64,000 bases of DNA from Asterias rubens. Its lineage: Eukaryota. This document shows, piece after piece, positions 1 to 22,349 of this stretch. A model generated the notes under the pieces. That model made no database searches. It was not told the DNA's origin and saw nothing but the letters and a program-made list of their open reading frames with translations. The stretch lies in the NCBI RefSeq assembly GCF_902459465.1, contig NC_047072.1, positions 16,058,001 through 16,122,000 on the forward strand, given 5' to 3'. The translations under genes were made by a program, and so were the position numbers. Position 1 is the first letter of the stretch. Every line of letters starts with the position of its first letter.

Positions 1-1745
1 CAAGAAAAGCCTAGCCAGCATGATGGAAGTACCCCGCAATTAAATGTAAAGGTTTAGCTGCAGTGTGGGTTTGTTTCTAGAGACAACAAACTTTTCTTTT
101 CTTAAGAGAATTTGTTTCTTCGCACCTTGCACCATTGACCTTGACAATGACGTCACCAACGCGCCATACCAGTTTAGCTTCCTATGAGCGCTGTTTAGGG
201 ATTATTTGACTCCAGAATAGTGGACTCCGCTGTAGGACTCTGCACTTTGGAAATGGGGAAAATAAGCTGATAATTTAAAATTAAAGTTCCACGTCGTTTT
301 CATGTGGTTGACTCATTTTGATAGAGTTGTAAAACTCTCGTATCATTGTCCAGCGGTCATGGGATTCAGTATTGTATGAATTTGCAACTTTCAATTCCTT
401 TATACGAAGTATTGGTTTAGCGTTAAGGTGGTTGTATCATGACAACTCTGCTGGTAAAAGTTACGTTATCGTTTTAACTTTGATCAATAAATCACAATGA
501 GCCGGACTTGAACCCTCGACCTCCGAACAAAAGCATAGGGAGACCACCATCAAAAGGGTTATTGTAGCTCGTTGTCTGCATGCTAACGCGCGGATGTAAT
601 TTTTCTTTCATATGATTATTATGAAACAATAAACTTTAACAAATATAAACTTCGCTATTTTCTTTAACCTCGTCTCCCCAAAGTTTCCCGTTGACGTCTA
701 ATAGACTCAGTTGATAGGCAGTAAGTTGCTACAGGCGGCTCATCAAGTGTAATTGTCAGGACAGTCCTACTGTATGTAAATTTAATCCCTTACACCATTT
801 CTAGTCTACCGTTTAACCGTGACTCTCCACGTGTTACAGTCACCAATGAGACAGAAATGCATAAAACGACCAAACGGTTGAGTTTGGAGTTCATTTCACA
901 TCACCGATCAAGAGAAGGAAGGATGAAATCAAAACATCTCAATTGGTTGCTACAGTCACTGTCTCAGTGTACGTACGGTATGTTGCCTCTGTTACACATG
1001 ATGTGATTATCAGTGACGATACCCAACCATCCCTGTTATGATGAGTGTTCAAATCCTATCCACGATAAGTCAACAGTGAGCTCAGTAAGTACGCACCTAA
1101 ATTTAATCTCAGCTGATAACAATACAGTATGCATGTTAGGCCTATGGAGAACTATGTATCACAGGTGTTTGTCAAATAAATGATCAAAGTTCAGGTTCCA
1201 TACGGTGTTTATACGCAAGCCATAACCGTTATTATTTACACAACTTATGCTTAATTGGGCGAGAAGCCGCTTAAATGAAAAGTACATTGTACGCTACCCT
1301 TCAGGTTGCATTGTGCACAGTGTGTTCCGGTGTATTTATCATCAGTTATGTTTGTGTAAGTGTGTATGGTACAAACGGGTCCTGTTTCAAAACTTATTAC
1401 TTCGACTTCAATTCGGTACCGGTAGCACCACCCAATAATGGAACTACACTGTCTCTAATTCGATGAAGCAACAATCAACATTTTACGTGAGTCAAAATGA
1501 CTAAACATTATTTTGTTAAGCAGACTTTCAGATCGTTCGTTGAAGGAATACTTAAATCATGTTTGTACTTAACTCCGCAGACGAATCCACAGTTGCAGTC
1601 ATGATTGGAGATGGATAGCGGTTCTTAACTTGGTGATGTTGCGGTTCAATGACAACGGAGAATGTGAAACCAGCAATATCAAGATAGCAGCATGTAACAG
1701 TCATTGTGTTACCTTTCAGAACAACAACATCAACCTTTAGACGAG

Positions 1746-2715
1746 ATGGTTCATCAGAAACACATCGCTTCCAGTTCTCCCTGTTTCATCCTACTCATTA
1801 TCTTACATCTTATTTCATTTTCTGGAGTATGCAGTTATAGTGGTATTCATTATACTCGCCGGGGAGACTTAAATATTGGTGGTTTGGTTCCATTACATCA
1901 CTACGATGAGAAGAATCAGCAATGTGGCACGCTTCGTACCTTAGGCGCGTTGAAGCGTCTTGAGGCTATAGTATTCGCTGTAGATTGGATCAATTCAAAC
2001 ACTAGTCTTCTACCAGATATCAATCTAGGCTTTGAGATATTTGACACTTGTTCTTCAAATGCTGTGACTTTGAGAGATTGTTTGAACTTTATACCTCCTC
2101 AGCGATGGACAGGCAATTGCTCTTCATGTAATACATCTGATCCTTGCCCTGAAAATTTACCACCAATAGTAGGTGTCGTCGGAGCACAAAGAAGTGGCTC
2201 TAGTGTCCAAGCAGCTATCTTACTTGGCCTGTACCAAATACCTCAAGTAAGTTACTTATCAACAAGTGATGAACTTAACAATGTATATCGTTATCCATAT
2301 TTCTTGAGGACTGTAGGGCCAGATAGCTTCCAAGTTGCTGCAATAGTAGATATTCTAGTTGAGTATGGTTGGAACTATGTATCGTTCATTAACTCAGATG
2401 ATACATACGGTAAAAGTGCGCAGCAAGAATTTAGAAAGAGAGCCCAAGAACTGAAAATATGTACTGCTATAACAAGAACTGTGTCTTTGTACGCTACCGA
2501 CAAGACATTTGATGAGTTAGTTGATGAGCTTCTGACTTTACAGACTAAAAGTCACGCCATTGTTGTCATTCTATTTGTTCAACTTGAAATGGCAAAAGAT
2601 ATATTTGATTCAGCAACAAGAGCTGGGGCTAATCGTAGATTCATCTGGATAGGAAGTGATGGTTGGGGGAATTATGGAGATGACGCAGTCAAAGGAAATG
2701 AAAATGCCACACTTG
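1746..2715 (+). CDS. Class C GPCR (mGluR-like) 5' coding exon '1A': signal peptide plus N-terminal ~320 aa of the Venus flytrap domain
   Basis: ATG at 1746 followed by a hydrophobic signal peptide (CFILLIILHLISFSGVCS). mGluR-type motifs GDLNIGGLVPLH, LGFEIFDTC, IVGVVGAQRSGSS, IPQVSYLSTS, YFLRTVGPD, DDTYG, WIGSDGW. Ends at CTT G|gtaagt, a phase-1 donor at 2716. The ORF-track start at 1704 is a non-ATG artefact. Confidence 0.93.
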
Positions 2716-3093
2716 GTAAGTTACTGATGACTTTATTGAGAAAATACTGTGTTATTTAGAGTCTTTCTCATTTGTTTTTACAAGAGTCTTGCCATGTGCG
2801 TGTAAAATGACACGATAGCCCATTAATATTGTACATGTCTATGGTATAATGTTAATCTAAAATGGGTCGTGGTTGGGTTTCTATATAAGATAACACATGG
2901 TTCATTGTCTTCGGTTTTCATTCACGATGTTTCCACATAAACCTATAGGAAACTTTAAGAGTTTTATTAACAATAATATATTTGTATTTTCATATTATAC
3001 TGACTCACAGCTATTACAACAAGGCGCCAAAGAGACATGACTTAAAGCAGGCATTACACAATCAAATAATTCTGGTAGTATTTATCGGCATAT

Positions 3094-4629
3094 TATGGTG
3101 TTCCATATGTGCCACCTTTATTCCGATTTTTTTTTTCCGTCGCATTTTTTTTTTCCGTCGCATTTTTTTTTTTTCGTCGCATTTTTTTTTTCCGTCGCAT
3201 TTTTTTTTTCCGTCGCATTTTTTTTGTATTTTTTGTTCCACGTGACTCCCACGTGATGAACTTTGAGCTTTCTAGAAAATGTATACGTTGAGATTTCTTA
3301 AGTGAGTTCCCCCGACGTTTAGTTTATGTCAGTCAAGAAGTTTGGTCTAATGGTGACTTTATAGGCCAATAGACCCCTTGCATATGACGTCACACCCTTC
3401 AAGAAGCGCAAAATAGTGCGCGTGAACTCAAGGTACATTTAGCGTTTTGCGTTATACAAGGGGGTCTATAGACCCCTTGCATAACGCGAACCGCTACACG
3501 GACGCTGAGCTCACGCGCACGTGTTTACGCACAAAGAACAGCTATAGTCCAATCATTTGCCTCCTTTGACCCCAGTGAGGGCGCTTTTTGAGCGTGTGAC
3601 GTCACATGCAAGGGGTCTTCTCCCAAAATGGCGGACAGGATAGGCGCGTTTGAGTGCGCTGCGCGTTGTGCAATGGGTCTATACGGAAATGTTTTAGCGA
3701 GTGCACTTGTGTGTGGAAGGAATGCAATCGCTATTGGCCGCCATGGAGAAACGAAAACTGGGGGCTACCCTGGTTGAATAAGACGAAATAAATTTATAGG
3801 TAAACATACAAATGACGCAAAAAACCCACCCTTGGTCTGGTTTATATTAAGTATTTTATTGTTTTACCACCTACACTCATTTTGAATTTGTGAGTGTCTT
3901 AAAGTCCTAGTCCTCTGTTTGGGTTTATTTTTGTTTTCTAATTAATTTTTGTAAACATGCAATAGTGGTGCATAAACTGTCTCCCCTTAGGCCTTGGGTG
4001 CAGCCATGTCATGTTTGAATAATTTATTTTCATTTAATTCTTTCAGAACAAAATCACTGAGGTGTACCGCTAAATAAATACCATGATTCGATCAAACCAA
4101 GTCAGTTCAGCCCAACGCATTTCTGCTGTGTTCTTACGTTTCCAGTTGGTCAACCCCCCCCCCCCCCCCACCACCACTCAATCAAAATTTCACATAAATC
4201 TCTACGGGACTGTACTATTAGAGGTATGCCTCTTGTATGAATGTTCATTTGTATGCAGTGAATTATTTCTTGCCTCTTAGACCAAAAGTTTCGTTTTCAA
4301 ACATAGGGTAGACCCGGGGTGGGTGCTTAATGGACGCTTGAATGAACTAAACGTCGGGGGAACTCACTTAAGAAATCTCAACGTATACATTTTCTAGAAA
4401 GCTCAAAGTTCATCACGTGGGAGTCACGTGGAACAAAAAATTAAAAAAAAATGCGACGGAAAAAAAAAATGCGACGGGACAAAAAAATGCGACGGAAAAA
4501 AAAATGCGACGGAAAAAAAAAAAATGCGACGGAAAAAAAAAATGCGACGGAAAAAAAAAAATGCTACGGAAAAAAAAATGCGACGGTAAATAAAAATCGG
4601 AATAAAGGTGGCACATATGGAACACCATA
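3094..4629. mobile_element. Non-autonomous foldback-type DNA element with ~230-285 bp TIRs containing internal CCGTCGCAT(n) subrepeats
   Basis: 3094-3324 is the near-perfect reverse complement of 4345-4629 (termini TATGGTGTTCC...GGAACACCATA). It is flanked by the direct repeat GCATAT at 3088-3093 and 4630-4635. No transposase ORF. Confidence 0.85.
3369..3684. mobile_element. Nested/tandem short palindromic MITEs with TAGACCCCTTGCA-type ends carrying TGACGTCA
   Basis: TAGACCCCTTGCA at ~3369 and ~3469, inverse copies ending ~3468 and ~3618, another GGGTCTATA at ~3676-3684, and TGACGTCAC just inside the outer ends. Confidence 0.6.
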
Positions 4630-5426
4630 GCATATGGCTTGAGATTTGAAAACAAAAAATTAAAAGAAAAACTTAAAAAAAAACATAGTCACCACAAACC
4701 GACACTTTACATGTTAAAGACGCGGGTCGCGTAAAAACGCTACCGAACATACGTCAACATTTATCTCTCAGATAAAAAAGCGCACAAACCAACACTATAG
4801 TAAATCACAACCAGTTAAGAATAGAGAGTATATAAATAACTTCATTTTGGATTGTTGTTTTCATATAAAAAATAACAATCGCTATTTCTTGTTAAAACAA
4901 AAAATAGATACTAAAAGACGAGTAGGTCTGACAGTACATGCGACGGTTTCACAATAGGCCTACTGCTGATGGTATAACAAACCTCTCTTATAACAAACTG
5001 ATTTATCCCTAACCCACATATCAAATAATGTGAACATTATTCTGCAAATAGTAATTAATTTAATAGACTTCCCACGATTGATCTGTATGCCTATATTTGG
5101 GATTCCCTTGAAATTGCCTTGAAAGAACTATACCATTGTTTGGTTGTATGATTCCATTGTGAAGCTATGGTTATGGCACTTAGGGTGTCCATTTTCAGAT
5201 CCTTATGCTGTTTTATTGACTACGTTGACTTGTTCTCCTGGTACCCTACCCTGGCCTGGATCCATATAATATAAATATACCATCAAGAATAGAAGACAAC
5301 AGCTGGCAGCTAAAATGATTGATAGTCTGAAATGATCAAAAGTTCAGTCAAAGGTACATCAATATGTAGAAGTAACGAGCATGAACTCTCATTGCAAGAT
5401 ATACATATATCGCTTTACATTGTGCT

Positions 5427-5660
5427 TTAAAGGCACAGGACACTTTGGGTAACTGTCAAACACCACATCCTCAGTTAATGTATCCCAATATAATATGCAC
5501 AAAATAACAAACCTGTGAAGGTTTGAGCTCAACTGGTCGTCGAAGTTGCAAGAGAAAAAGAACAAGAAAAAAAACCCTTGTTCCACAACTTTGTGTGCTT
5601 TCAGATGCATTATAAAAGGCTTTATATCAACAGCTCTCCATTGCTCGTAACAAAGTAAAC
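5427..5660. mobile_element. Partial TTAA/AGGCA-ended MITE (Kolobok/T2-like), opposite orientation to the 14064 copy
   Basis: Begins TTAA AGGCACAGGACAC; reverse-complement similarity to the 3' half of 14064-14436 and 8568-8942. Confidence 0.7.
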
Positions 5661-7242
5661 AAATATTGTGAACACTTATTTTGAGTATAGTGTCCAGTGC
5701 TTTTTAGTGCATTTAGTTTATATAAAAGGCGTTTTGTTGCAAGTTGACATTGTGTTGTGTAAACCTCCAAACAAATTAGACCAAAAACGACTGCGCTTAT
5801 TTAATAATCTCTCCGTAAACACTCACCAAACTAAAAGGGAAATAGTCGTCTTACAAACATCCGAAAGAAGTTGCACAGTACTGTGTTAATGCGAGGGTGT
5901 TAAATAACTTGATGTTTATTGTTTTTATCAGGATATTAAACTGTAAAATTTTCACGCGTGGAAATAAAGTAACCCCAATAATATGTCCATTGCACAAATA
6001 GATATAAAAGCAAGAGAACAACATGTTGCATTTTATAGTGTAATACTACCTTTTTAAGAGTCTATAAAACAACCACAATGGTATTCAGACATTGTACATC
6101 GGTTGCCTTGTTCTTTTGTTTTGGTAACCAGCATTGGGTTTATGCAACTTGAGACAGAACGTGTGGGTAGATTCAATCAACATTGGAGGTGTCACCAATG
6201 AATTTATTCTAAGAGGACAGAAAGGCCAAAAAAGTAATCCTTATTGATATTGCAACAATGAGTATCAATATCATATCATTCTAATGGCACCGAACAAAGA
6301 TATTGACTATTATAGGTAGACCACCAACCTAGGGCTGGAGAGCTCATCAGAGAAAGCCGATACGTTAACCTGGAGGTCTTTGGTTCAAGTCTTGCTCCAG
6401 TCATTTTATTTTATTAAAACACAAACCATAACATCATTTGGTTATTCCTCTGTCAGTCAGCCACTATTGTAGTGCCAATAATTGACCCCAGTTCTTTCCT
6501 ACATGGCTCCAGCCAGACTCGGGATTGAAATCGTTTGGCGTCGGTTTACAAACAATGATCGGGAGGACATTGTGCTTTGAAGCGAATGATTGGAGTATTT
6601 GTTCACCCTTGTTGATGTCATTGGAACTACTGTTCTTGATTCGAGTACAAGATTTGAATAATGGTCCGAAGTACACACTTTCCAAGTCATTCAAATAATC
6701 TCCACCTATGTTATAATAGTAAGACCTTCATAAAGCCCTTGCGTGTTTGAAAGGAAAGCTGTGCCCTACGACAATCACTTTTACATATTTATGACAATAA
6801 AAAACGAACTATATTGAAAGCCTACAGAAGCTTTCGAAGCAAGTTCAGAAATATTTAATTTGGTTATGTAAAAAGATATCAGCATTTATGCTCCAAAATT
6901 TGAATTTGAGAATTGGTTACTGTCAGTAACACTTATCAGATTGTGTAACAATAGAATTGGTTACTGTCAGTAACACTTATCAGATTGTGTAACAATTTTG
7001 ATATTTTCTAAATCTTAATTATGTGGAAATAAATGTTTCTATAATGAAATGAAATTATACTTTAGGGATTTTCGGCAATATCGCGACCACCATTCGAGAT
7101 GAAATGTTCACTTGTTAGTTTATTGTACATTTAAACACTTATATCAGGATTAAATTAGGAGTCAAATGATTCCACAAACTAAAGTTATACTCTACCTTTA
7201 ACGCTTTGTTGTCGAGTAATTAACATTTAACAACTTCAATGT

Positions 7243-7624
7243 TGAAGGAACACGTTGCCTTGGATCGGTCGAGTTGGTCTTTGAAAAGCGTTTGTAACCG
7301 TTTGTTATAAAATGCATATGGTTAGAAAGATGATTAAAAGTAAAATACAATTATCCACACACATTTGCCTCGAAATTGCGTGGTTTTCCTTTTACTTTGC
7401 GAACTAACACGGTCGGCCATTTATGGGAGTCAAAGATTTGACTCCCATAATGGCCGACCGTGTTAGTCGACGAGGTAAAAGGAAAACCACGCAATTTCCA
7501 GTGAAACTTGTGTGGATCATTACTTTGAAAATATCTTTCTAATCATATGCATTCTATAACAAACGATTACATACGCTTTTTCAAAGACCAACTCGACCGA
7601 TCCAAGGCAACGTGTTCCTTTAAC
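7243..7624. mobile_element. ~380-bp almost fully palindromic MITE (AAGGAACACGTTGCCTTGGATCGGTCGAG...CTCGACCGATCCAAGGCAACGTGTTCCTT)
   Basis: Arms pair over nearly the whole length around a GGGAGTCAAAGATTTGACTCCC centre (~7435). Flanks are TTGA/TTAA. Confidence 0.85.
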
Positions 7625-8567
7625 GTCTACCATGCGAGGCAACCGTCATCTATAAATAATCTGTTTAATCGAGGTTTCAAATCACAGAACTGTGTCATGT
7701 GAATGGGCTTTATAGTAGAATATTCAACACACTTAGCAAAGCCTTGATGCATGTGAATGGGCTTTATAGTAGAATATTCAACACACTTAGCAAAGCCTTG
7801 ATGCCTATTATTGAGGGGGGGGGGGGTGTCACGTGGAAATATAAGTAACCATAATGAGATGTTTGATCAAAAAGAACGTCAGGAAAATAATATTAAACTG
7901 TGACCTATTGTGGAAACATTATAATTTCCTTTGAGGCAATCATATTACATCCATTGGTTCCAGTTTTGCTATATAGAGAGTGTCTTCGCCTTCAAATCAG
8001 AAAAATAGAAAGACAGAACAATTCTGATTCTGAGACTGGTTCAGCTGTGTTTCAAGATGGATTGTCCTTGGCTATGTAATCAATGAGAAAAGCGATGACA
8101 TTGGCATTAGGCTCGACGTACATTCAGGATTACGTCCAATAAATAGGTTGTGCAGTTTGGCCCTGTTTAAAAACATGTGGCAATATAGAAATCCATTAAA
8201 AAGATTAATTTCAAGACCATAAGATACTACCATTTTGGGTTTTGACTCATCAACTAATTCTTCCGAATTAATTATAGGCACATGCTATGTATTGCTGGCT
8301 TCTGCGACTTTACGATGCAGTTTTGAAATTAGAATTCCAATTTGAAGTGTTCAGTTTGTGAAAAATTGTGGCAAGGCTTGTCGGTTTGTATTTTGTCTTA
8401 TTCTCCATGGAATGAAAAAGTGAAACCGAAAAATTTATAAGGCTATATTTGTGGGCCCGATGCATTCATTCTAAATGGTTTTTTTTTTTCAATTGTTACA
8501 ATTTGTTTTTATTCGAAAGGATCAAAGTGACATTACCAGCATAAAAGTTCCCTTTGGACATAATTTG

Positions 8568-8942
8568 TGGACACTATTGGTAATTACTCAAAATAATTAT
8601 AGTTGTTAGCATGAAACATGACTTGGTAACGAGTGATGGGGAGCTGTTGATAGTGTAAGTGAGAAATGGCTCCCTCAGAAGTAACGTAGTTTTCAAGAAA
8701 GAAGCAATTTTCAACGAATTTGATTTCGAGACCTCATAAATAGATGTTGAGGTCTCGAATCAAGCATCTGAAAGCCCACATCTTCGTGTGACAAGGGTGT
8801 TTTTTGCTTTCATTTATTCTCTCGCATTTTTGACGACCAATTGAGCTCAAATTTTCACAGGTTAGTTATTTTATGCATTTGTTGAGATACAGCAAGTGAG
8901 AAGACTGGTCAGAACAATTACCAATAGTGTCCACTGTCTTTA
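8568..8942. mobile_element. TTAA/AGGCA-family MITE copy (left end eroded)
   Basis: GGACACTATTGGTAATT...AATTACCAATAGTGTCC TIRs; body shared with the copies at 14064 and 23321. Confidence 0.8.
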
Positions 8943-9924
8943 TAAAAGATACCGTTTTAGGGTGGGTAGGTTGGGGGTGCGTGTTTACTTTGATGAGCAA
9001 TGTAGCACTGAATCATTCTTAACGGAGCAGACAGTTTATTATCACAATAAAACGGAATGTGACAGTCTCAATAATAAATCGCACTCTACGTTGATCTTGT
9101 AAATTCCAGTCGGAAGAACTTTAGGTGTAAATCAAGTTCTCCGTTGAAAGTGAAGATACATTACTGTTTTTACTGTGCATACGGGAATTGGGCTGGTGTA
9201 CTTTATGATGTCAACTATAACCTATATATACAACTGCCTTATAGCTATACGTGCGAGTATCTGTCATAATAAGAGGGCAGGATGGCATACTAACTTGTCT
9301 TTATTTCCTCCTAGAATGTCTTAAATGTTTGATTTAAACTTTTCTTTAAAATCCAGTGTTGGTGACTGATATAGCTCTATCTTTGATAAAGTAGTCGTTG
9401 TTCCATTAAACAAAGACAGTTACTAATCAGGTCACCCCGTCATGAGCGAATATTGCACTTAAGACAAAAGGAAGTTTAATTGTACTCCTCCAAACATTGA
9501 CTACTGTCTTGTCTTATCGTATCTAATGGACTGGGGGAAAAGGGTCTATCAATCATTGGTTATAGTCACAAACAATCTCAAGATTGTTAAGTAAGGCAAA
9601 GTCTAATGTCTACAATAAAACCATATCGGGTATATTCTTGATAAAGGATAACTTTGCAAAGTAAACTTAATATTGATGAATGGTATGTATAGTGAACGAG
9701 CTGTCTTGTGCATGAAACTCGTGGGTTCGAGTCCCGATCATGTTGTGTCCTTTTAGCAGCAAAATGAGTAAATGAGTGTGCACTATAGAGATGGTTGATG
9801 TAAATGATTAGCAACACGATATCCCAATCAGCAAAATGAGTAAATGAGTGTACACTATAGAGATGGTTGATGTAAATGATTAGCAACACGATATCCCAAT
9901 CAGCGTACATTACTTATTCTTTGT

Positions 9925-10358
9925 TTAAAGGATTCGGGTACTTTTTCAAAATGCCCACAGATTTACATTAAACTTACCTGGTTTGAAGATAATGATAGTG
10001 GAAAGCTTCCCTTGAAATAGTACTAACTAAGGTTGTGTTCGTGTAGTTTTTGAGAAATGAGTAAAACAAGTCACAAAATAATTTTGGTCTCAGAGACCAA
10101 AACTATTTTAGCATGTAAAATCCCGTTAACCAGTTATGATATTATACCAAAACCATAGCATAACTGGTTAATACGTTTTTACATGCTAAAACTGAGACGC
10201 AAATTATTACTTTTACTCGTTTCTCAAAAACTACAGCACCTCGGCAAGTAAAATTCCAAGGGAAGCTTTCTACTATCATAATCTTCAAACTGTGTAAGTT
10301 TAATGTAAATCTGTGGACATTGTGTTTTTTGTTTGGAAAAAGTACATAGACCCTTTAA
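9925..10358. mobile_element. TTAA-flanked MITE with AGGAT/AGGGT ends (Kolobok/T2-like), quasi-palindromic
   Basis: TTAA|AGGATTCGGGTACTTTTT ... AAAAAGTACATAGACCCT|TTAA with internal inverted arms. A partial copy of the same family lies at ~52905-53032. Confidence 0.8.
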
Positions 10359-12421
10359 TGCTCTAATTTAATATATTTTGATGGGCCCTAATAATTATAC
10401 TCAGCTTGAAAACCTACACAATGGGTAATTGTCTTTAGTGCTAATGTTATTTCGAAAAACGTACGTTAACACAACGGGCCCAAGGCATTGTAACAATAGT
10501 ATCTTATTAACAATGTGACATTTGGACAACTATTACTAAACAAAAATGACACGTTGATAAGCAGTTATGACGACTTAATGGACATGTGATTTAATCAAGA
10601 ACTTAATTTAGTTATTAATGAAAACACAAAGACAGTAACGAATGTTAGTTACGCCAAGAACGTTTATTTTGATTATTTCTTTAATTTATTTAAAAGATTG
10701 TTTGTTTCAATGTGTTTATTTGTTTATTTGATTGTTTGTTTGTGGGGGTGTTTTTCGGGGAGTTTGGGGTTTTGTTGTTTTATGTTTATTTATTTATTGT
10801 TTATCTAGGCCCTATTCATAAATTGTTGTAGTTTTTTATATTTCTTATTTCATGTTATCCATTTATCAGAGACAACCATGGTCTCCCGTGGGTCACAGTG
10901 ACACATAAACAATAGTTTACAAAACTACAGTATCATGATTGTGCATTTAAACAATACGCCCCTAGTTTAAAAATCAAAATTCAGAACAATTTGATTGCAT
11001 AAATCCCTATTCACCGTAAGATTGTCATTTTAAGACCGAAATAGTCTGAGATTAAAACAACATCACAACTTCCAGCCCAAGATTCACCAATGCATTATTA
11101 GGTTGGAACTCGGAGCGTTGTTCAAACCAAACGGCTTAATGTTGTTGATACAGTTTGTTAAACTTAGACATCTTCTAATCCTGAATTGCGAGCTACCTGC
11201 CCAACCAAGCACTGAGTGTGTATAGATTACACGCAGATTTCTCTCTATCAACAATCTATTTCAGTCTCTGTATTACACGCTTTCTTTTATCAGATCTCAT
11301 ATTACACTTTCACTTAATCGATTTTGTCCTTTCCTTTCAAACCGTGGTCCAATCTTCGGTATGGTGTTCCCCTATAGTTAAAGCCCAATAACGACAACTG
11401 GATTTACATCTATACTTTATTATCGCTAAATCCAAAGGATCAAAACCAAACGTCTTTAGTGCCCAGATATTTATCAGTTTCAAATTTATGTCGAATTTAA
11501 ATTGTCCAACTCTTGTAACCTTACCAAACACTCTTGCTAGATTTAAATGTATGTACAAAGATTAATATTTTAAATAGTGGTCAGTAGTTTTCATAATATA
11601 ATGTTTATCGGTTTTAATTATTGACGTCCGCCATTCTCAATGCCAATCAGTCAATCCACCCTTTTAACACGTAAAATAAACAATATTTTCCCGCTAAAAT
11701 GGAGAGTAATTCAGTCTTTTTATACTCAATGTTGACAGAAGTATTTCTCGCATCGGCTCCGTCAGTCAATCAAGCAATTATGTCTATTATTATTAAGCAA
11801 TCCCCTTTCATTATAATTATTTAGTCACGTAGCTTACACACTGGAGCTAATGTGAAATAAAGTCAATGATTTCAACTGAAAATGATGGATGTGATTTATT
11901 TAGAAGTCATTAGAAGATATTGGTGGTTGTTAATACATAACCAATTATCTGGCCTTTGTGTATAGATGTAGTGCACTACTCAGAACACGAGTCAATTATT
12001 GATAGAGTCTAATATAGGGCCTACACAATCAATAATTTGTTGACCAAATCTTAATATCTCAGACGTTGAAGTAGATTCAGTGATAAAGCAATCTGACATC
12101 TGATGTTTAGTATAAAATACTCACTCCACAGTTCATTTTTACACAATGCAGCCATTGATTCAAACACTGCCCAGTCCTTGCGCAGAGACGCCATTATATG
12201 ACTTCTAGTAAAATCAGTCTGCTTAATTGTATTCAAACATGTCGTATTAGTCTACTTCGTCTTCTGCATAGACACTATAATCTGACTTCATATGGGAATC
12301 TGTGTATTCATCATGGCGTATTGTCTACTTCTTCATATTTAGAGACATTCTAAAGCTGATGCCATCCACGATGATGACTGAGAACCCTTCATACCAAATA
12401 AGATTCGACTGAGAAACAGAA

Positions 12422-13346
12422 ATGGCCGGCCTTTTTAATAAGACGACGACTTTACTTTGTGTTGTTATGATATTGACATCTTCATGTCATTGTAGAGTTT
12501 CCGTCAAAGAGAAGAGTTTCACCAAAGATGGCGATTTGATTATTGGTGGTTTACTACCTCTACATCATCCTAAACCATTCAATGCTCATGAATGTGGTGG
12601 TATTCGTTCAATTACTGCATTAAAGGAACTGGAAGCAATGGTCTATGCTATTAACTTCATTGACAATAATGACACTATATTACCAGGTGTACATCTAGGA
12701 TTCGATATTCGTGATACTTGCTTCTCTGAATCAATAACTCTCCGTTCTGCACTTAACTTTATTCCTGCGTACAGGTGTAACGACTCACACCAATCCATTG
12801 TGGGTGTGGTCGGTGCCCGACGAAGCAGTTCCAGCGTTCAAGCTGCTTTATTGTTTAGTTTGTTCAAAATACCACAAATTAGTTATCTTTCTACAAGTGA
12901 CGTGTTGAGTAATAAATATCGCTTTCCTTTCTTCATGAGAACAGTTAGCCCAGATGTGCTCCAAGTTGCAGCTATATATGATATTCTACTTGAGTTTGAC
13001 TGGACTTATATTTCTTTTATTAGCTCTGATGATGTTTATGGTCAAAACGGCCAAAAGGAGTTTAGGTTAAGAAGTATTGGAAGTCCAATCTGTACTGCAA
13101 CGTATCATACTGTTTCAGTCTTCAATGATAAAACTGTCTTTGATAAAGTAATCGGAGAATTGATGGAACTACAGGAAGACACAACCTCTGTTGTAGTTGT
13201 TTTATTTGTGGATATTCTGCTAGCGAGAAGAATCTTTGCTTCAGCAGATAACATGGGAGCTAAGAGACGATTCATCTGGGTTGGAAGTGATGGCTGGAGT
13301 AACTACGGCGATTTAGCGATTGATGGTTATGAGCAGGTTACAGCCG
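12422..13346 (+). CDS. Class C GPCR (mGluR-like) 5' coding exon '1B': signal peptide plus N-terminal Venus flytrap domain
   Basis: ATG at 12422, signal peptide (LLCVVMILTSSCHC), motifs GDLIIGGLLPLH, LGFDIRDTC, IVGVVGARRSSSS, IPQISYLSTS, FFMRTVSPD, WVGSDGW. Ends at GCC G|gtaaat, a phase-1 donor at 13347, homologous in position to the exon 1A donor. Confidence 0.95.
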
Positions 13347-13710
13347 GTAAATTTAAACCTAATCCAAAGAAAATATTCTTAAACATCGTGAATGTGATTC
13401 TTAAATATATGATCATTATACAGAGACGGTTGTGTGTATCATGCATTTATAGGACCGAGTTAGTTAACTCATCGCCAAACCAATGTTAACATTATTTTGA
13501 CAAATATTGAGAAACAATTTCTCTTTGGAGATGATAGCCATCATTGAATGAAGTTTAAAATATTAATCTTTGAACGTTTATCGACAGGATAGTCTTTCCA
13601 TCCTCCATGGTATTTCAAACAAGCCTCTTATTAGTTTCAAGCAAATGTCATTGTACGTTTTACCTATCCAATTGAACTTAAAGGTCAAGCTGTTATTGAG
13701 ATGTATCGTA

Positions 13711-13843
13711 AGTAAGATGTATTGTAAGATCAATAACAGTAAGATGTATTGTAAGATCAATGACAGTAAGATGTATTGTAAGATCAATGACAGTAAGACG
13801 TATTGTAAGACCAATGACAGTAAGATGTCTTGTAAGATCAATG
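13711..13843. repeat. 27-bp minisatellite, ~5 copies
   Basis: Unit AGTAAGATGTATTGTAAGATCAATGAC; explains the repetitive short ORFs at 13570-13947. Confidence 0.9.
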
Positions 13844-14063
13844 GCATCTTGAGGTGGTTCGATTTTTGAATGGTGTGAATTCCGGTACAAACATACAGTG
13901 ATAAAATTATAATGTTGTGCTCCGATGTACATTATACACACAGACATCGACGTAAAGTAGAATGGGACAGAAATTCAATTTATTTTCCAACACTTCATCC
14001 TTCACTCTAAATATAATTTAACTCAGTTGAGTGAATAACGAATTTCAAGCAGATATTTTGAAT

Positions 14064-14436
14064 TTAAAGGCACCGGACACTACTGGTTTTTACTCAAAAT
14101 AATTTGTAGCATTAAAACTAACTTGAACGATCAATGGCGAACTATTGATAGTATAAAACGGCTCCATCTGAAGTAACGTAGTTTTTGAGAAAGAAGTAAT
14201 TTTTCAAAACAGTTATTGAATTGAAATCGAGATCTCAGCTGAGGTCTTGAATTCAAGCATCTGAAAGCACATCACAACTTGTGCGACAATGGTGTTTTTC
14301 TTCCATTATTCTCTCAATTTCGACGACCAATTGAGTTCAAATTTTCACAGGTTTGTTATTTTATGCATGTTGGGATACACCGAGCGAGAATACTGGTCTT
14401 TGCATGGCAATACCAAAGGTGTCCAGTTGCCTTTAA
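14064..14436. mobile_element. Full-length TTAA-flanked AGGCA...TGCCT MITE (Kolobok/T2-like), in the GPCR intron
   Basis: TTAA|AGGCACCGGACAC ... GTGTCCAGTTGCCT|TTAA; at least four related copies in this window. Confidence 0.85.
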
Positions 14437-15537
14437 ATTATTTATTTACAGTGTTGTCATGTGTGATGAAGTAATGCGTCAACATTACACAAAATGTAGC
14501 GATGCATCAGTTTATGCAGTCCAAACTATAGGTTGTTTTCTCCCTGAATGTCATTTACCTAAGGCCAACCATTTAATGTAGCGATGCATCAGTTTATGCA
14601 GTCCAAACTATAGGTTGTTTTCTCCCTGAATGTCATTTACCTAAGGCCAACCATTTGATGGACATCATGAAGGCCTGTCTCATTTCCTTCCAGAGAATCA
14701 ATATTAATCACGCTAGGAGTATCTCTCAGAAATATAATCTTTCTCAAGACAGGGCGTTTTATAAACATTCTTAAAAAGAAAGATGGTTTAGAAGCAACAC
14801 AATATTGACTAATAAAATATTGATGGTGGTGGCTTGTTTGTCTTACTTCGTCAAGCCGCCCATTGTTCGCTCACGAAAAACTGTGGAAATAAGCCAAACA
14901 AAATAAACATAATAAAGGTCGTTTTTAGCGGTAAGCTGAAAGGCTACTATGCCCGAACTCAGTGACACACGAATATTCAATCGAATATTTAATCATTCAG
15001 TCTACTTATCTTAAAATTATCATCTTATATAACCTCGAAAACTACCCCGAACCGACATAATTTGTCACTAAGGTTACAAACAATGATGTCAGGATTAGCA
15101 ATTTGATAAATTAAAAAACAAACCATCACGATCAATCGCTTTTTCCCCCGAGTCTATAGAGCCACGTTTCAGTTCCACAAACGCGATCATAATGAATTGC
15201 GTTCTACCCTGAACCTTAAAAAAAATAAAATACAAATAAAAACAATATAACATGTTCAGGGATGCGAAAAGTTCGTAGCTACATTTGAAATACAAAAATA
15301 AGCTTTTTGTGTTGTACCGACCCAGCCCAACCTAACCCAGCCCAACCTACACTAAACCCACACACCCACCGATCATTCACCCAATCCACCCCCAAAACAC
15401 CACAACCTACCCCAAAAAATGGAGGAAGGAAATTCCTCCATCACTCATGCCCAAACCAAACGTCTGGGGGGGGGGGATGAGATATAAGTATATAAACCAA
15501 TTACTATTTACATGCCCTTTTGTTTTTGTGTCTGCAG

Positions 15538-16718
15538 GTGCATTTACAGTGTCTCCTTTATCGAGGAAGCTTGATACATTCGATGAGTACTTTCACTCTC
15601 TCAACACAACCAGCAAGAATCCCTGGCTCCTAGAGTTTCTAGAGACTTACACTGACTGCTCATCAACGGATACAGGGAACCAGAGTTGTGATAGACCGGG
15701 ACTGATTGGTCAAGCAGATGACGGTCAAGCATCTCATGAAACTCTAGTAATTGATTCAGTCTTTACTTTTGCTTATGCTCTCGATAAAATGCGACGAGAT
15801 AGATGCCCTGGTGATGTGACAGGACTATGTCCCAATATGACTGACATTGACGGTGATTCCTTGTTGGAATACCTTCTTGATACACAGTTTCAAAGTCTGG
15901 CTAATGGTTGGATTAGTTTTACAGATGAAGGGAATATGTATGGAAGGTATGCCGTCAATCACCTACAGGGTAATAACTCAACAGGAAAGTTTAGCTTTCT
16001 GCGTGTTGGAGAGTGGAGACAATCCATAGATCCAACCAAACCTAATTTAAGAATAGGGACAGATGTCCCTTGGTATTTATGGGAAGGAGCATCCATTAAC
16101 AATGAGACTGGTATCCCAAGATCAGTATGTAGCTTCCCTTGCCAACCTGGAGAGAAAATCAACCGTATTCCAGACAACCTGTGCTGCTGGACCTGCACCC
16201 CTTGTGAACAATCCGAGATCGTAGTGAATAACGGTACCCAATGCGAGTCTTGTATTGATATAGACATTAAGAAGTTTAGTTGGCCTAATGAAGACCAATC
16301 AGCTTGCGTTGATATCCCTTCTGACTTCATCCTTAGTGATCAACCATGGGCTATTACTATTCTAAGTGTAGCTTCCATATGTGTAGCAGCTACTATCTTC
16401 GTCATGGGTATCTATATCCGTAATCAAGAGATGCCACTTATTAAAGCATCAAGTCGGGAGCTTAGTTACATCATCTTCATTGGCATCATCATGTCTTACG
16501 TCACAGCTATCTTCTTCTCTGTGGCACCTTCTCCTTTCGTTTGCGTCCTCCGACGTCTTGGACCAAACATCGCCACATCTCTCATCTATGCGTCCATAGC
16601 AACCAAGACAATCAGACTCTATCGTATATTCAGAGCATCTAAGAAGTCAGCAAAGAGACCTAACTACATCGGATCCATGTTTCAAGTTGCATTGTCGCTT
16701 ATCGTCACAGCTCTAGCG
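15538..16718 (+). CDS. Class C GPCR exon 2: rest of the VFT, 9-Cys cysteine-rich domain, TM1-TM4 start
   Basis: Acceptor ttttgtgtctgcag|GT (phase 1, G+GT=Gly, giving GAFTVSP). Contains KNPWLLEF, CRD SVCSFPC..CCWTCTPC..CESC..WPNEDQSAC (9 Cys), PLIKASSRELSY, KTIRLYRIF. Donor GCG|gtgagt at 16719. Confidence 0.95.
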
Positions 16719-17057
16719 GTGAGTAGAAAACTTAATTACCTCAACCTTTTTCAAAAAAGTATAAGACGTTCCAAACTAATTGGTTCGCCGATTTACAAAC
16801 AAAACAAAACAATATGGTTCAATGTCTTGATTCGTTTTCAGTTTTAATTTCAGATCAAACACATAAGTTTTAAGTGGTTTGTTTGTTGAAGTTAAAGATC
16901 GTTACAGTTATAATAACTGTAATAGCAGAACGACTACAATACCATCAAGACAAAATGTTTGATTGTGACAATGATTGTTATTCACTACAATATACAAGTG
17001 CATGATTTCAGCAGCGGAGTAATTATTCATCTGATTTGTCTTGTATCTTGTATTCAG

Positions 17058-17906
17058 GTTATTTGGACCGTTGTGTGGATTTGTGTGGATCCACCTAAAG
17101 TAGTTCCCGAGATGCCGAATGAGAAAGAGAATAAGCTTCAAGTAACATGTCATCTTAATATCATTGAGACTGTTGGTGTGATGATATGGGATGTAGCTCT
17201 CGTTATTGTCTGTTGTATCTTTGCATTTATGACCCGGAAACTTCCAGAGAATTACAACGAAACACGCTTCATAACATTTTGCAGTTTCTGCACCTTAGTG
17301 GTTTTCGTCACCTTCTCACCAATTTACTTCACATCACGTGAGCCGTACTACCAAGCTAGCTACTACTCTGCTGGTCTTATCATCAATGCTACAGTAACTC
17401 TTACATGCCTCTTTGCAGTTAAAATCTACGCTTTGTACTTCGTAGATGAAGATGAGATGAACATCTTCACACAGACACGTCTTCGAGCTAATACCAAGAC
17501 AGCTTCGACTCGTGGCATGCCACCACCTAACATTACTTCATCGACAACTCAGAATGAAGTTCATTCAAACCCAACGTATGTAACAGAAGCAGAAAAATAT
17601 ACATCAATGCCAATGGAAAGCAAGTCCAACCCTGACGTCAATAGGAATGAACCTAGGGGTAATCGATACAGAAGTTGTTCAAGTAACAGTAGCAAAGGTC
17701 TCAATAAACCTACTAACTCCACAGGCGTTATGGAAAGACTTAGTCGACCAAATAAGGTGGACCCTGATACGTCAAAGTTACGTCATAACGACAGCCAAAC
17801 TCAACGTGCAAATGGTGTAACATCACCTGATCAAATTGCGGCAGCTAGTCCAGATACAAAAGTCATATTTAATCCCGATGTGGTTGAATTTGATACCCAT
17901 ATGTAA
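17058..17906 (+). CDS. Class C GPCR exon 3: TM4-TM7 and cytoplasmic tail ending in a class I PDZ-type motif (DTHM)
   Basis: Acceptor cttgtattcag|GTT (phase 0). Contains TRKLPENYNETRFITF and FSPIYF; stop TAA at 17904-17906. Spliced 1B+2+3 = 2955 nt (984 aa); 1A+2+3 = 3000 nt (999 aa); both stay in frame. Confidence 0.93.
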   Translation, partial: VIWTVVWICVDPPKVVPEMPNEKENKLQVTCHLNIIETVGVMIWDVALVIVCCIFAFMTRKLPENYNETRFITFCSFCTLVVFVTFSPIYFTSREPYYQASYYSAGLIINATVTLTCLFAVKIYALYFVDEDEMNIFTQTRLRANTKTASTRGMPPPNITSSTTQNEVHSNPTYVTEAEKYTSMPMESKSNPDVNRNEPRGNRYRSCSSNSSKGLNKPTNSTGVMERLSRPNKVDPDTSKLRHNDSQTQRANGVTSPDQIAAASPDTKVIFNPDVVEFDTHM

Positions 17907-21719: not shown

Positions 21720-22349
21720 GAAGATGTGGTCGCAGGGTTTTATATTGTTGTCATGAAGATGTGGTCGCAGGGTTTTATATTGTTGTCATGAAGATGTGGT
21801 CTCAGGGTTTTATATTGTTGTCATGAAGATGTGGTCGCAGGGTTTTATATTGTTGCCATGAAGATGTGGTCGCAGGGTTTTATATTGTTGTCATGAAGAT
21901 GTGGTCGCAGGGTTTTATATTGTTGTCATGAAGATGTGGTCTCAGGGTTTTATATTGTTGTCATGAAGATGTGGTCTCAGGGTTTTATATTGTTGTCATG
22001 AAGATGTGGTCGCAGGGTTTTATATTGTTGTCATGAAGATGTGGTCGCAGGGTTTTATATTGTTGTCATGAAGATGTGGTCTCAGGGTTTTATATTGTTG
22101 TCATGAAGATGTGGTCTCAGGGTTTTATATTGTTGTCGTGAAGATGTGGTCGCAGGGTTTTATATTGTTGTCATGAAGATGTGGTCGCAGGGTTTTATAT
22201 TGTTGTCATGAAGATGTGGTCGCAGGGTTTTATAATGTTGTCATGAAGATGTGGTCGCAGGGTTTTATATTGTTGTCATGAAGATGTGGTCGCAGGGTTT
22301 TATATTGTTGTCATGAAGATGTGGTCGCAGGGTTTTATAATGTTGTCAC
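21720..22349. repeat. 35-bp minisatellite, ~18 copies
   Basis: Unit GAAGATGTGGTCGCAGGGTTTTATATTGTTGTCAT with CGC/CTC variants. Confidence 0.97.

What the first reader, a model, noticed from the sequence alone, without database searches (positions are those of the whole stretch)
1746..17906. Candidate variable-first-exon class C GPCR: two interchangeable ligand-binding modules share one set of CRD/7TM exons (protocadherin/UGT1-like architecture)
Seen in sequence: exons 1A (1746-2715) and 1B (12422-13346) each have their own ATG and signal peptide and encode the same ~310-320-aa stretch of the Venus flytrap. Both are stop-free despite only ~55% identity (manual alignment), and both end in a phase-1 GT donor at the same codon. 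Only one acceptor exon (15538, phase 1) and one 7TM region exist; the 9.7 kb between 1A and 1B has no ORF resembling exon 2 or 3, only MITEs and repeats. Either exon splices in frame to give a 999-aa or 984-aa receptor. Established: clustered protocadherins and UGT1A use promoter choice among variable first exons spliced to constant exons, and most class C ligand-contact residues lie in this N-terminal segment. Inference: this locus diversifies receptor specificity by swapping the first exon. More variable exons may lie upstream of the window. I am not aware of this architecture in class C GPCRs, but could not search.
Basis: partly seen in the sequence, partly recalled or inferred. Interest (0 to 1): 0.88.

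Follow-up and report, generated by a model that had tools for sequence, protein, structure and literature searches.

The report
Sea-star glutamate-receptor gene, two first exons
A starfish (Asterias rubens) metabotropic-glutamate-like receptor gene carries two diverged copies of its first coding exon, which encodes most of the ligand-binding domain, ahead of one shared set of downstream exons; both copies have been kept under selection in all five sea-star species examined, so the gene very probably makes two receptors with different sensing heads.

Summary
Exons 1A (1746-2715) and 1B (12422-13346) each have an ATG, a signal-peptide-like start and the first about 220 positions of the ANF_receptor (Venus flytrap) domain. 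They are 50% identical. Both end in a phase-1 GT donor at the same codon. The 64 kb window holds only one exon 2 (15538-16718) and one exon 3 (17058-17906).

The order 1A - 1B - exon 2 - exon 3 recurs in Asterias amurensis, Acanthaster planci and Patiria miniata. An unnamed ENA species has 1A and 1B in the same order. First-exon trees give a 1A clade and a 1B clade with matching species order. dN/dS is 0.09 for 1A and 0.16 for 1B, so 1A is not a dead relic or an assembly artefact.

RefSeq already models both forms as isoforms X1 and X2 in A. planci. The window's own RefSeq model instead fuses 1A and 1B into 1282 aa, probably an annotation error.

There are only two variable exons, not an array. 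All 1B copies replace the distal ligand-contact Arg with Glu and lack a Cys-rich loop.

No transcript data could be examined, so splicing and promoter choice remain inferred. This is a new member of a known kind, of moderate interest.

The parts
1746..2715 (+). Exon 1A. It carries an ATG, a signal-peptide-like N-terminus and Venus-flytrap residues 1-323, and ends in phase 1 (G|GTAAGT). It is the ancestral-type first exon.
   Evidence: 100% match to residues 1-323 of XP_033635688.1; 76-78% aa identity to the A. planci and P. miniata 1A exons; dN/dS 0.089
3094..4629 (.). Foldback, MITE-like element with 60-163 nt terminal inverted repeats and internal 18-nt tandem repeats, lying in the 1A-1B interval. 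It is absent at the orthologous site in A. amurensis, so it is a recent insertion.
12422..13346 (+). Exon 1B. It has its own ATG with an in-frame stop 12 nt upstream, a signal-peptide-like N-terminus and Venus-flytrap residues 1-308, and ends in phase 1 (G|GTAAAT). It is a derived, faster-evolving duplicate found only in sea stars.
   Evidence: dN/dS 0.164 for A. planci against P. miniata
12496..12498 (+). Cryptic in-phase acceptor (gtagAG|TT) inside the 1B signal-peptide coding region. The A. rubens RefSeq model uses it to chain 1A to 1B and produce 1282 aa. It is the second of two AGs spaced 2 nt apart and has a weak pyrimidine tract.
15538..16718 (+). Constant exon 2 with a phase-1 acceptor. 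It encodes the C-terminal part of the Venus flytrap, the cysteine-rich domain (NCD3G) and the first half of the 7TM domain.
17058..17906 (+). Constant exon 3. It encodes the second half of the 7TM domain and the C-terminal tail, and ends with the stop codon at 17904-17906.

Best explanation
The locus is one metabotropic-glutamate-receptor-like class C GPCR gene of the starfish Asterias rubens with two alternative first coding exons. An ancestral gene had the structure exon 1 - exon 2 - exon 3, the structure seen in the brittle star Amphiura. In the sea-star stem lineage its first exon was duplicated into intron 1. The upstream copy (1A) stayed conservative. The downstream copy (1B) diverged quickly and then also came under constraint. 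Each copy has its own start codon and signal peptide, no need for an acceptor, and a phase-1 donor at the same codon. A transcript that begins at either exon therefore splices to the single exon 2 and yields a 999-aa or a 984-aa receptor. The two receptors share part of lobe 1, the cysteine-rich domain, the 7TM domain and the tail. They differ in about two thirds of the ligand-binding Venus flytrap.

Shown here: the anatomy, its conservation in five species, purifying selection on both exons, and fixed 1A/1B differences at a ligand-contact residue and in the dimer loop.

Inferred: that the choice is made by separate promoters, that both mRNAs are actually produced in A. rubens, and that the isoforms differ in ligand selectivity or dimerisation. 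On ligand selectivity, 1A keeps the Arg that binds the distal carboxylate of glutamate in mGlu receptors, and 1B has Glu there.
For: Anatomy.

Family: the best solved relatives are group II/III mGlu receptors, for exon 1A (E 1e-54) and exon 2 (E 3e-65).

Same exon order elsewhere:
- A. amurensis locus L006: 1A at 10001, 1B at 17594, exon 2 at 20804, exon 3 at 22263.
- A. planci locus L002: 1A at 10001, 1B at 25960, exon 2 near 31100, exon 3 near 32640.
- P. miniata loci L003 and L001: 1A lies 20.9 kb upstream of 1B on the same strand, with no exon 2 or 3 between them.
- An unnamed ENA species: a 1A-type and a 1B-type ORF 8.9 kb apart on one strand.

Donors: G|GTAAG for 1A and G|GTAAA for 1B, at the same codon, in the window, A. 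planci and P. miniata.

Tree: the four 1A sequences and the four 1B sequences form sister clades (support 94/96). The species order is congruent within each clade, and the 1B stem is long (0.87).

Selection:
- A. planci against P. miniata: dN/dS is 0.089 for 1A, 0.164 for 1B, 0.099 for exon 2 and 0.133 for exon 3.
- Window against Valvatida for 1A: codon positions 1+2 are 83% identical while position 3 is 28-32% identical.
- A. rubens against A. amurensis: both first exons are 98.5-99.0% identical, compared with 90-96% for flanking DNA. Neither has an indel or a stop.

Gene models: A. planci isoforms X1 and X2 are identical from ...VG|AFTLSP onward and differ only before it. A. amurensis XP_071801643-5 is 1A + exon 2 + exon 3. 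P. miniata XP_038077741 is 1B + exon 2 + exon 3.

Ancestral state: the Amphiura P0157 locus has a single 1A-like first exon.

Residues: the Arg aligned to mGlu7 R78 is present in all 1A copies and in the outgroups, and is Glu in all four 1B copies. The Ser, Thr, Asp, Tyr and Asp residues of the alpha-amino-acid motif are retained in both exons. A 14-aa Cys-rich loop is missing from all 1B copies.
Against: Automated annotations disagree between species. The A. rubens RefSeq model chains 1A to 1B through a cryptic acceptor. A. amurensis has no 1B isoform annotated. P. miniata annotates 1A as a separate 346-aa truncated product.

The 1B donor (GTAAAT) is weaker than the 1A donor. dN/dS for 1B within Asterias is 0.51, but this rests on only 14 substitutions.

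No conserved non-coding block was detected upstream of 1B, whereas 1A has one in Valvatida. An independent 1B promoter is therefore unproven.
Confidence: 0.8

Rival explanations
1. Serial use. 1B is an internal exon, and the real product is the 1282-aa protein of the A. rubens RefSeq model. In that model 1A splices to the cryptic acceptor at 12498 and then on to exon 2, giving a receptor with a duplicated N-terminal flytrap segment.
For: XP_033635688.1 (P0262) has exactly this structure and matches the window piece by piece. The splice is in frame.
Against: All 1B orthologues keep an ATG at the aligned position and a hydrophobic signal-like segment upstream of that acceptor. An in-frame stop lies 12-15 nt before the ATG in Asterias and Patiria. 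In-phase AGs occur 2-5 times per 50 codons by chance in every species and are not positionally conserved. The acceptor is the second AG of AGAG and follows a weak pyrimidine tract. Gnomon models in three other species do not chain the exons. One and two thirds of a flytrap has no structural precedent (my knowledge).
Confidence: 0.07
2. 1A is an independent short gene that makes a secreted, truncated flytrap fragment, as in the 346-aa P. miniata model. Only 1B makes the receptor.
For: P. miniata P0235 joins the 1A donor to a 24-codon terminal exon about 0.76 kb downstream.
Against: That tail peptide has no counterpart in the window or in A. planci. 1A stops two thirds of the way through the ANF_receptor domain, so a stable fold is unlikely. 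The phase-1 donor compatible with exon 2 is conserved. A. planci X1 and A. amurensis XP_071801643-5 join 1A to exon 2. 1A is the ancestral-type exon of the gene.
Confidence: 0.06
3. Same two isoforms, but produced from one promoter. A shared non-coding leader exon upstream of 1A would be spliced to either 1A or 1B (mutually exclusive splicing), rather than each first exon having its own promoter.
For: A. amurensis has three transcript accessions encoding the identical 1A protein, which suggests UTR variation. A 0.55 kb conserved non-coding block lies 0.6-1.1 kb upstream of 1A in Valvatida, and none was found upstream of 1B.
Against: No acceptor or leader exon could be identified here. In the known cases of tandemly duplicated 5' coding exons the choice is made by alternative promoters (PMC8373072).
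Confidence: 0.2
4. 1A is a dead partial duplicate, or the arrangement is an assembly artefact in which 1A's own exons 2-3 were lost.
For: None beyond the absence of a second exon 2/3 in the window.
Against: dN/dS for 1A is 0.089, and 76-78% aa identity is retained while synonymous sites are saturated. The same architecture appears in four independent assemblies and a fifth contig. 1A is more conserved than the constant exons.
Confidence: 0.01

Closest known systems
Tandem-exon-duplication-derived N-terminal substitutions through alternative first exons (the class described for human genes in PMC8373072). UGT1A and the clustered protocadherins are the large-array extreme.
   Same: Homologous first coding exons lie in tandem. 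Each has its own start codon and a donor in the same phase, and each splices to one set of constant exons. The variable exon carries the substrate- or ligand-recognition part. The arrangement shows deep evolutionary conservation.
   Different: There are only two variable exons, and none further within 10 kb upstream in two species. Separate promoters are not demonstrated. The gene family (class C GPCR) is not one I know, or could find, described with this layout.
FGFR IIIb/IIIc mutually exclusive exons (my knowledge)
   Same: Two paralogous exons encode part of a ligand-binding domain. Their exchange changes the receptor's ligand specificity while the signalling part stays constant.
   Different: In FGFR the exons are internal and are chosen by regulated splicing, not first exons. 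They swap half of one Ig domain rather than two thirds of a flytrap plus the signal peptide.
GABA-B1a/1b, and the N-terminally truncated taste mGluR4 and mGluR1 variants (my knowledge)
   Same: These are class C GPCR isoforms that differ at the N-terminus through alternative transcription starts.
   Different: Those variants add or remove sequence (sushi domains, or part of the flytrap) and keep the same flytrap sequence. Here a paralogous, 50%-identical flytrap segment is substituted.
Insect gustatory receptor genes with several large alternative 5' exons, such as Drosophila Gr28b and Gr39a (my knowledge)
   Same: These are chemoreceptor genes in which tandem paralogous first exons encoding most of the ligand-facing part are joined to shared 3' exons.
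   Different: It is an unrelated protein family, of ion-channel-type 7TM proteins. The variable part there is transmembrane, not an extracellular flytrap.
Vertebrate group II/III metabotropic glutamate receptors (mGlu2/3 and mGlu4/6/7/8)
   Same: They are the best sequence matches for both variable and constant parts. Domain order is the same (VFT, NCD3G, 7tm_3), and the alpha-amino-acid binding residues are conserved.
   Different: Vertebrate genes have one first coding exon per gene, and diversity comes from separate paralogous genes. The 1B form lacks the distal Arg (mGlu7 R78 position) and the Cys-rich dimer loop.

Membership tests
Class C GPCR, metabotropic glutamate receptor-like | N-terminal Venus flytrap (ANF_receptor) domain | tested here: met
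   ANF_receptor scores E 1.8e-51 for 1A and 8e-42 for 1B, covering positions 2-221 of the model. Positions 278-352 lie in exon 2.
Class C GPCR, metabotropic glutamate receptor-like | Cysteine-rich domain (NCD3G) followed by a 7tm_3 heptahelical domain | tested here: met
   NCD3G scores E 9.5e-11. 7tm_3 positions 4-126 lie in exon 2 and positions 130-251 in exon 3. mGlu3, mGlu4 and mGlu7 are the best solved matches.
Class C GPCR, metabotropic glutamate receptor-like | Glutamate-contact residues, including the distal-carboxylate Arg (mGlu7 R78 or mGluR1 R78 position) | tested here: inconclusive
   The Ser, Thr, Asp, Tyr and Asp residues of the alpha-amino-acid motif are present in both exons. 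The Arg is present in all 1A copies and replaced by Glu in all four 1B copies. The actual ligand was not tested.
Variable-first-exon gene (UGT1A / clustered protocadherin type) | Two or more homologous first coding exons in tandem, each with its own start codon | tested here: met
   1A and 1B are 50% identical and both start with ATG followed by a hydrophobic N-terminus. An in-frame stop lies 12 nt upstream of the 1B ATG.
Variable-first-exon gene (UGT1A / clustered protocadherin type) | Each variable exon ends in a donor of the same phase, compatible with a single constant acceptor, and there is only one constant exon set | tested here: met
   Both donors are phase 1 at the same codon and the acceptor at 15538 is phase 1. 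The window has no second exon 2 or 3, and neither do the orthologous loci.
Variable-first-exon gene (UGT1A / clustered protocadherin type) | Each variable exon is joined on its own to the constant exons in mature mRNA | not testable with these tools
   The evidence is indirect only. RefSeq models join 1A to exon 2 (A. planci X1, A. amurensis) and 1B to exon 2 (A. planci X2, P. miniata). The evidence behind those models could not be inspected. The A. rubens model chains both exons.
Variable-first-exon gene (UGT1A / clustered protocadherin type) | A separate promoter in front of each variable exon | not testable with these tools
   No TSS data are available. A conserved non-coding block lies upstream of 1A in Valvatida, and none was detected upstream of 1B.
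Variable-first-exon gene (UGT1A / clustered protocadherin type) | A large array of variable exons (many alternatives) | tested here: not met
   There are exactly two. No further VFT exon lies in the 10 kb upstream of 1A in A. planci or P. miniata, in the introns, or in window positions 1-1745.

The most novel reading that the evidence does not exclude
One gene may supply two functionally distinct class C subunits. On this reading, the ancestral-type 1A isoform binds glutamate or an acidic amino acid and forms disulfide-linked dimers. The sea-star-specific 1B isoform, with the Arg-to-Glu change at the distal contact and without the Cys-rich dimer loop, would recognise a different ligand or act as a modulatory partner. 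Because dimer-interface helices also lie in the swapped exon, 1A/1A, 1B/1B and 1A/1B dimers could have different pharmacology. That would be a single-locus equivalent of the multi-gene heterodimer code of vertebrate mGlu and T1R receptors.
Probability: 0.25. Interest if true: 0.7.

Novelty: new member of a known kind. Interest (0 to 1): 0.5.

Why it matters
Class C GPCRs are usually thought to diversify ligand recognition by duplicating whole genes. Here a lineage has kept a duplicated ligand-binding first exon on a shared transmembrane and signalling chassis since before the Forcipulatida-Valvatida split. It amounts to a natural domain-swap experiment.

The arrangement gives a clean system for asking which part of the flytrap sets ligand selectivity and dimer pairing. 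The two heads differ at a known distal ligand contact and in the dimer disulfide loop, while everything downstream is identical.

It also flags a probable error in the A. rubens RefSeq model (a 1282-aa chimera), a missing 1B isoform in A. amurensis, and a split 1A model in P. miniata.

It does not open a long-standing question, and the general mechanism, a tandemly duplicated 5' coding exon, is well known.

Tried and rejected
1. I looked for relic exons 2/3 between 1A and 1B with sensitive tblastn (word size 2, E 10) and found none.

2. I asked whether the multi-flytrap giants that topped the representative search (P0001-P0004, 2500-3900 aa, 6-10 ANF_receptor stretches) were concatenated variable-exon arrays. 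They hold complete flytraps plus NCD3G and are 'CASR protein, partial' models from Polypterus senegalus, most likely merged tandem genes. They are not relevant here.

3. I tested whether the male-biased 'mGluR3' of the A. planci sensory-tentacle study (PMC6267866) is this gene. Its qPCR primers do not occur in locus L002, so it is another paralogue.

4. I checked Amphiura P0245, an orphan first-exon-only model. It is followed by its own NCD3G/7TM model 30 Mb away from P0157, so it is a split annotation of a separate gene and not a second variable exon.

5. The ENA contig carrying P0013 has a 1A-like exon followed 0.5 kb later by its own exon 2. P0013 falls in the brittle-star-like clade, which fits the single-exon ancestral state.

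6. dS between the window and Valvatida is saturated, so NG86 fails. I used the A. planci / P. miniata pair and the A. rubens / A. amurensis pair instead.

7. I looked for transcript-derived proteins spanning the 1A/exon 2 junction in the large protein collection. Only genomic ORF calls and RefSeq models turned up.

8. Literature searches for this architecture in class C GPCRs, echinoderm mGluRs or A. rubens found no description of it.
Full report
**Observation**

The window holds two ORFs of similar content at 1704-2759 and 12422-13489. Each begins with an ATG (1746 and 12422) followed by a hydrophobic, signal-peptide-like stretch.
- The two ORFs are 50% identical over 310 aa (E 4e-111).
- Each covers positions 2-221 of the 353-position Pfam ANF_receptor model.
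- Both end at a consensus donor in phase 1 at the same aligned codon: cacttG|GTAAGT after 2715 and agccG|GTAAAT after 13346.
- One acceptor, tctgcag|GT at 15538, opens an exon carrying the rest of ANF_receptor, the NCD3G cysteine-rich domain and the first half of 7tm_3. This exon ends at 16718.
- A third exon (17058-17906) carries the second half of 7tm_3 and the tail.
- Splicing either first exon to exons 2 and 3 gives open frames of 999 and 984 aa.
- Sensitive tblastn finds no other exon 2-like or exon 3-like sequence in the 64 kb, and the window has no N runs.

The only adjustment is that identity is 50%, not about 55%.

**What the gene is and where the window comes from**

The closest solved structures for both the variable and the constant parts are group II/III metabotropic glutamate receptors (mGlu7, mGlu3, mGlu4).

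The RefSeq protein XP_033635688.1, 'metabotropic glutamate receptor 3-like [Asterias rubens]' (P0262), maps to the window at 100% identity over its 1A segment (residues 1-323) and maps piece by piece to 1B, exon 2 and exon 3. The window is therefore A. rubens.

**Comparative evidence**

The same exon order, 1A - 1B - exon 2 - exon 3 on one strand, is present in three other annotated sea-star genomes.
- *Asterias amurensis* (locus L006): about 95% DNA identity to the window, with 1A at 10001, 1B at 17594, exon 2 at 20804 and exon 3 at 22263.
- *Acanthaster planci* (locus L002): 1A at 10001, 1B at 25960, exon 2 near 31100 and exon 3 near 32640.
- *Patiria miniata* (overlapping loci L003 and L001): 1A lies 20.9 kb upstream of 1B.
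- An unnamed species in an ENA assembly: a 1A-type ORF (83% identical to the window's 1A) lies 8.9 kb upstream of a 1B-type ORF on one strand.

In none of these is there an exon 2/3 copy between 1A and 1B. No third flytrap exon lies within 10 kb upstream of 1A in A. planci or P. miniata. The donors are G|GTAAG for 1A and G|GTAAA for 1B, at the same codon, in the window, A. planci and P. miniata.

A maximum-likelihood tree of first-exon sequences gives a clade of the four 1A exons with short branches. Its sister is a clade of the four 1B exons with a long stem (0.87). Joint support is 94/96, and both clades show the same species order: (A. rubens, ENA species) and (A. planci, P. miniata).

The brittle star Amphiura filiformis has a single 1A-like first exon at the orthologous-type gene. 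The simplest history is a duplication of exon 1 into intron 1 in the sea-star stem lineage, followed by rapid divergence of the downstream copy and retention of both copies.

**Selection**

Between A. planci and P. miniata, where dS is about 1.0-1.3:

| Exon | dN/dS |
|---|---|
| 1A | 0.089 |
| 1B | 0.164 |
| exon 2 | 0.099 |
| exon 3 | 0.133 |

Between the window and either valvatid species, synonymous sites are saturated. For 1A, third positions are 28-32% identical while first and second positions are 83% identical. 1A keeps 76-78% aa identity, which is more than exon 2 (72%), exon 3 (67-69%) or 1B (55-59%).

Between A. rubens and A. amurensis, both first exons are 98.5-99.0% identical with no indel or stop, while the flanking DNA is 90-96% identical. 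dN/dS is 0.19 for 1A and 0.51 for 1B, the latter resting on only 14 substitutions.

These results exclude a dead partial duplicate. Recurrence in independent assemblies excludes an assembly artefact.

**Gene models**

Automated RefSeq models of this locus disagree between species.
- A. planci has isoform X1 (1011 aa, 1A form) and isoform X2 (996 aa, 1B form). They are identical from ...VG|AFTLSP onward.
- A. amurensis has three accessions encoding the 998-aa 1A form. It has no 1B form, although 1B is intact in its genome.
- P. miniata has the 1B form (991 aa). It also has a separate 346-aa model that joins the 1A donor to a 24-codon terminal exon, and that exon is not conserved in the window or in A. 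planci.
- A. rubens itself has a 1282-aa model. It joins the 1A donor to a cryptic acceptor (AG at 12496-12497) inside the 1B signal-peptide region and then runs on to exons 2 and 3.

I consider the A. rubens model an annotation artefact, for these reasons:
- All 1B orthologues keep the ATG and a hydrophobic leader upstream of that point.
- An in-frame stop lies 12-15 nt before the ATG in Asterias and Patiria.
- In-phase AGs occur by chance 2-5 times per 50 codons and are not positionally conserved.
- The acceptor is the second AG of AGAG and follows a weak pyrimidine tract.

I could not inspect the evidence behind any of these models, and no transcript data were available. The junctions in A. 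rubens mRNA therefore remain to be shown.

**Functional differences between the heads**

An eight-sequence alignment with outgroups has 125 columns identical in all eight sequences and 18 fixed 1A/1B differences. There are 106 columns invariant in 1A but variable in 1B, against 35 of the reverse.

The residues aligned to the alpha-amino-acid contacts of mGlu receptors are kept in both exons. They sit in the motifs RS-G/S, LSTSD, GPD, D-x-YG and GSDGW.

The Arg aligned to mGlu7 R78 is present in all 1A copies and in the brittle-star and crinoid outgroups, and is Glu in all four 1B copies. In mGlu receptors this Arg binds the distal carboxylate of glutamate (my knowledge of the mGluR1, mGluR3 and mGluR7 structures). 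This confirms and extends the scan's separate note s1-178726.

All 1B copies also lack a 14-aa Cys-rich loop. In mGlu receptors that loop carries the inter-subunit disulfide (my knowledge). The single Cys left in A. rubens 1B is Phe in A. amurensis and P. miniata.

Different ligand selectivity and different dimer chemistry are therefore plausible, but they are inferred.

**Mechanism and rivals**

The best explanation is two alternative first coding exons spliced to common exons (confidence 0.8). Choice by separate promoters is the more likely sub-mechanism. The rivals are:
- a common leader exon with mutually exclusive splicing, which would make the same products (0.2 within the main model);
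- serial inclusion as in the A. rubens RefSeq model (0.07);
- 1A as an independent truncated gene (0.06);
- a relic or assembly artefact (0.01).

**Comparison with known systems and novelty**

The kind is known. Tandemly duplicated 5' coding exons used through alternative promoters give homologous N-terminal substitutions, and such events are unusually well conserved (PMC8373072). UGT1A and the clustered protocadherins are the large-array cases.

This locus is a two-exon member of that kind, so the comparison with protocadherin or UGT1 arrays holds for architecture but not for scale. I know of no class C GPCR in which a paralogous flytrap segment is exchanged in this way. Six literature searches found none. 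The A. planci RefSeq isoforms do already encode it implicitly.

The verdict is a real, conserved and probably functional feature: a new member of a known kind, of moderate interest.

Noticed in passing
window 1746-17906: The RefSeq protein for this A. rubens gene (XP_033635688.1, 1282 aa) chains exon 1A to exon 1B through a cryptic acceptor at 12498. RefSeq treats the same locus three other ways in A. amurensis, A. planci and P. miniata. This is probably a mis-annotation worth reporting.
   Followed up: yes
window 3094-4629: A 1.5 kb foldback, MITE-like element with 60-163 nt inverted termini (96-97% complementary) and internal 18-nt T-rich tandem repeats. It is absent from the orthologous site in A. 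amurensis, so it inserted recently.
   Followed up: partly
L002 8878-9402 and L003 8819-9361: A non-coding block of about 550 nt, 70% identical between A. planci and P. miniata despite dS of about 1.3, lies 0.6-1.1 kb upstream of the 1A start codon. It has stops in all frames and is single copy in the loci held. It is a candidate promoter or 5' UTR element. It is not detectable in the window.
   Followed up: partly
window 34125-37153 (-): A LINE-type retrotransposon with an endonuclease ORF (Exo_endo_phos, 476 aa) and a reverse-transcriptase ORF (RVT_1, 541 aa). The two ORFs overlap by 28 nt in different frames.
   Followed up: partly
window 48731-49648 (-): An intact 305-aa ORF with an ISXO2-like DDE transposase domain (DDE_Tnp_IS1595, E 8e-18), in the most GC-rich stretch of the window (45%).
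   Followed up: no
window 31789-33189: A long, near-perfect tandem array with a 36-nt unit. It reads as the repeat [12 protein letters not shown] in one frame and produces a spurious 466-aa ORF.
   Followed up: no
window 41419-41775 (-): An exon with a Radical_SAM match. In A. amurensis the gene downstream of the receptor, on the opposite strand, is a 667-aa UPF0004 + Radical_SAM + TRAM methylthiotransferase (CDK5RAP1/CDKAL1-like), so gene order is conserved.
   Followed up: partly
P0001-P0004 (Polypterus senegalus 'CASR protein, partial'): Gene models of 2500-3900 aa with 6-10 complete ANF_receptor domains and 2-3 NCD3G domains but no 7TM. They are most likely merged tandem class C receptor genes in the bichir annotation.
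   Followed up: partly
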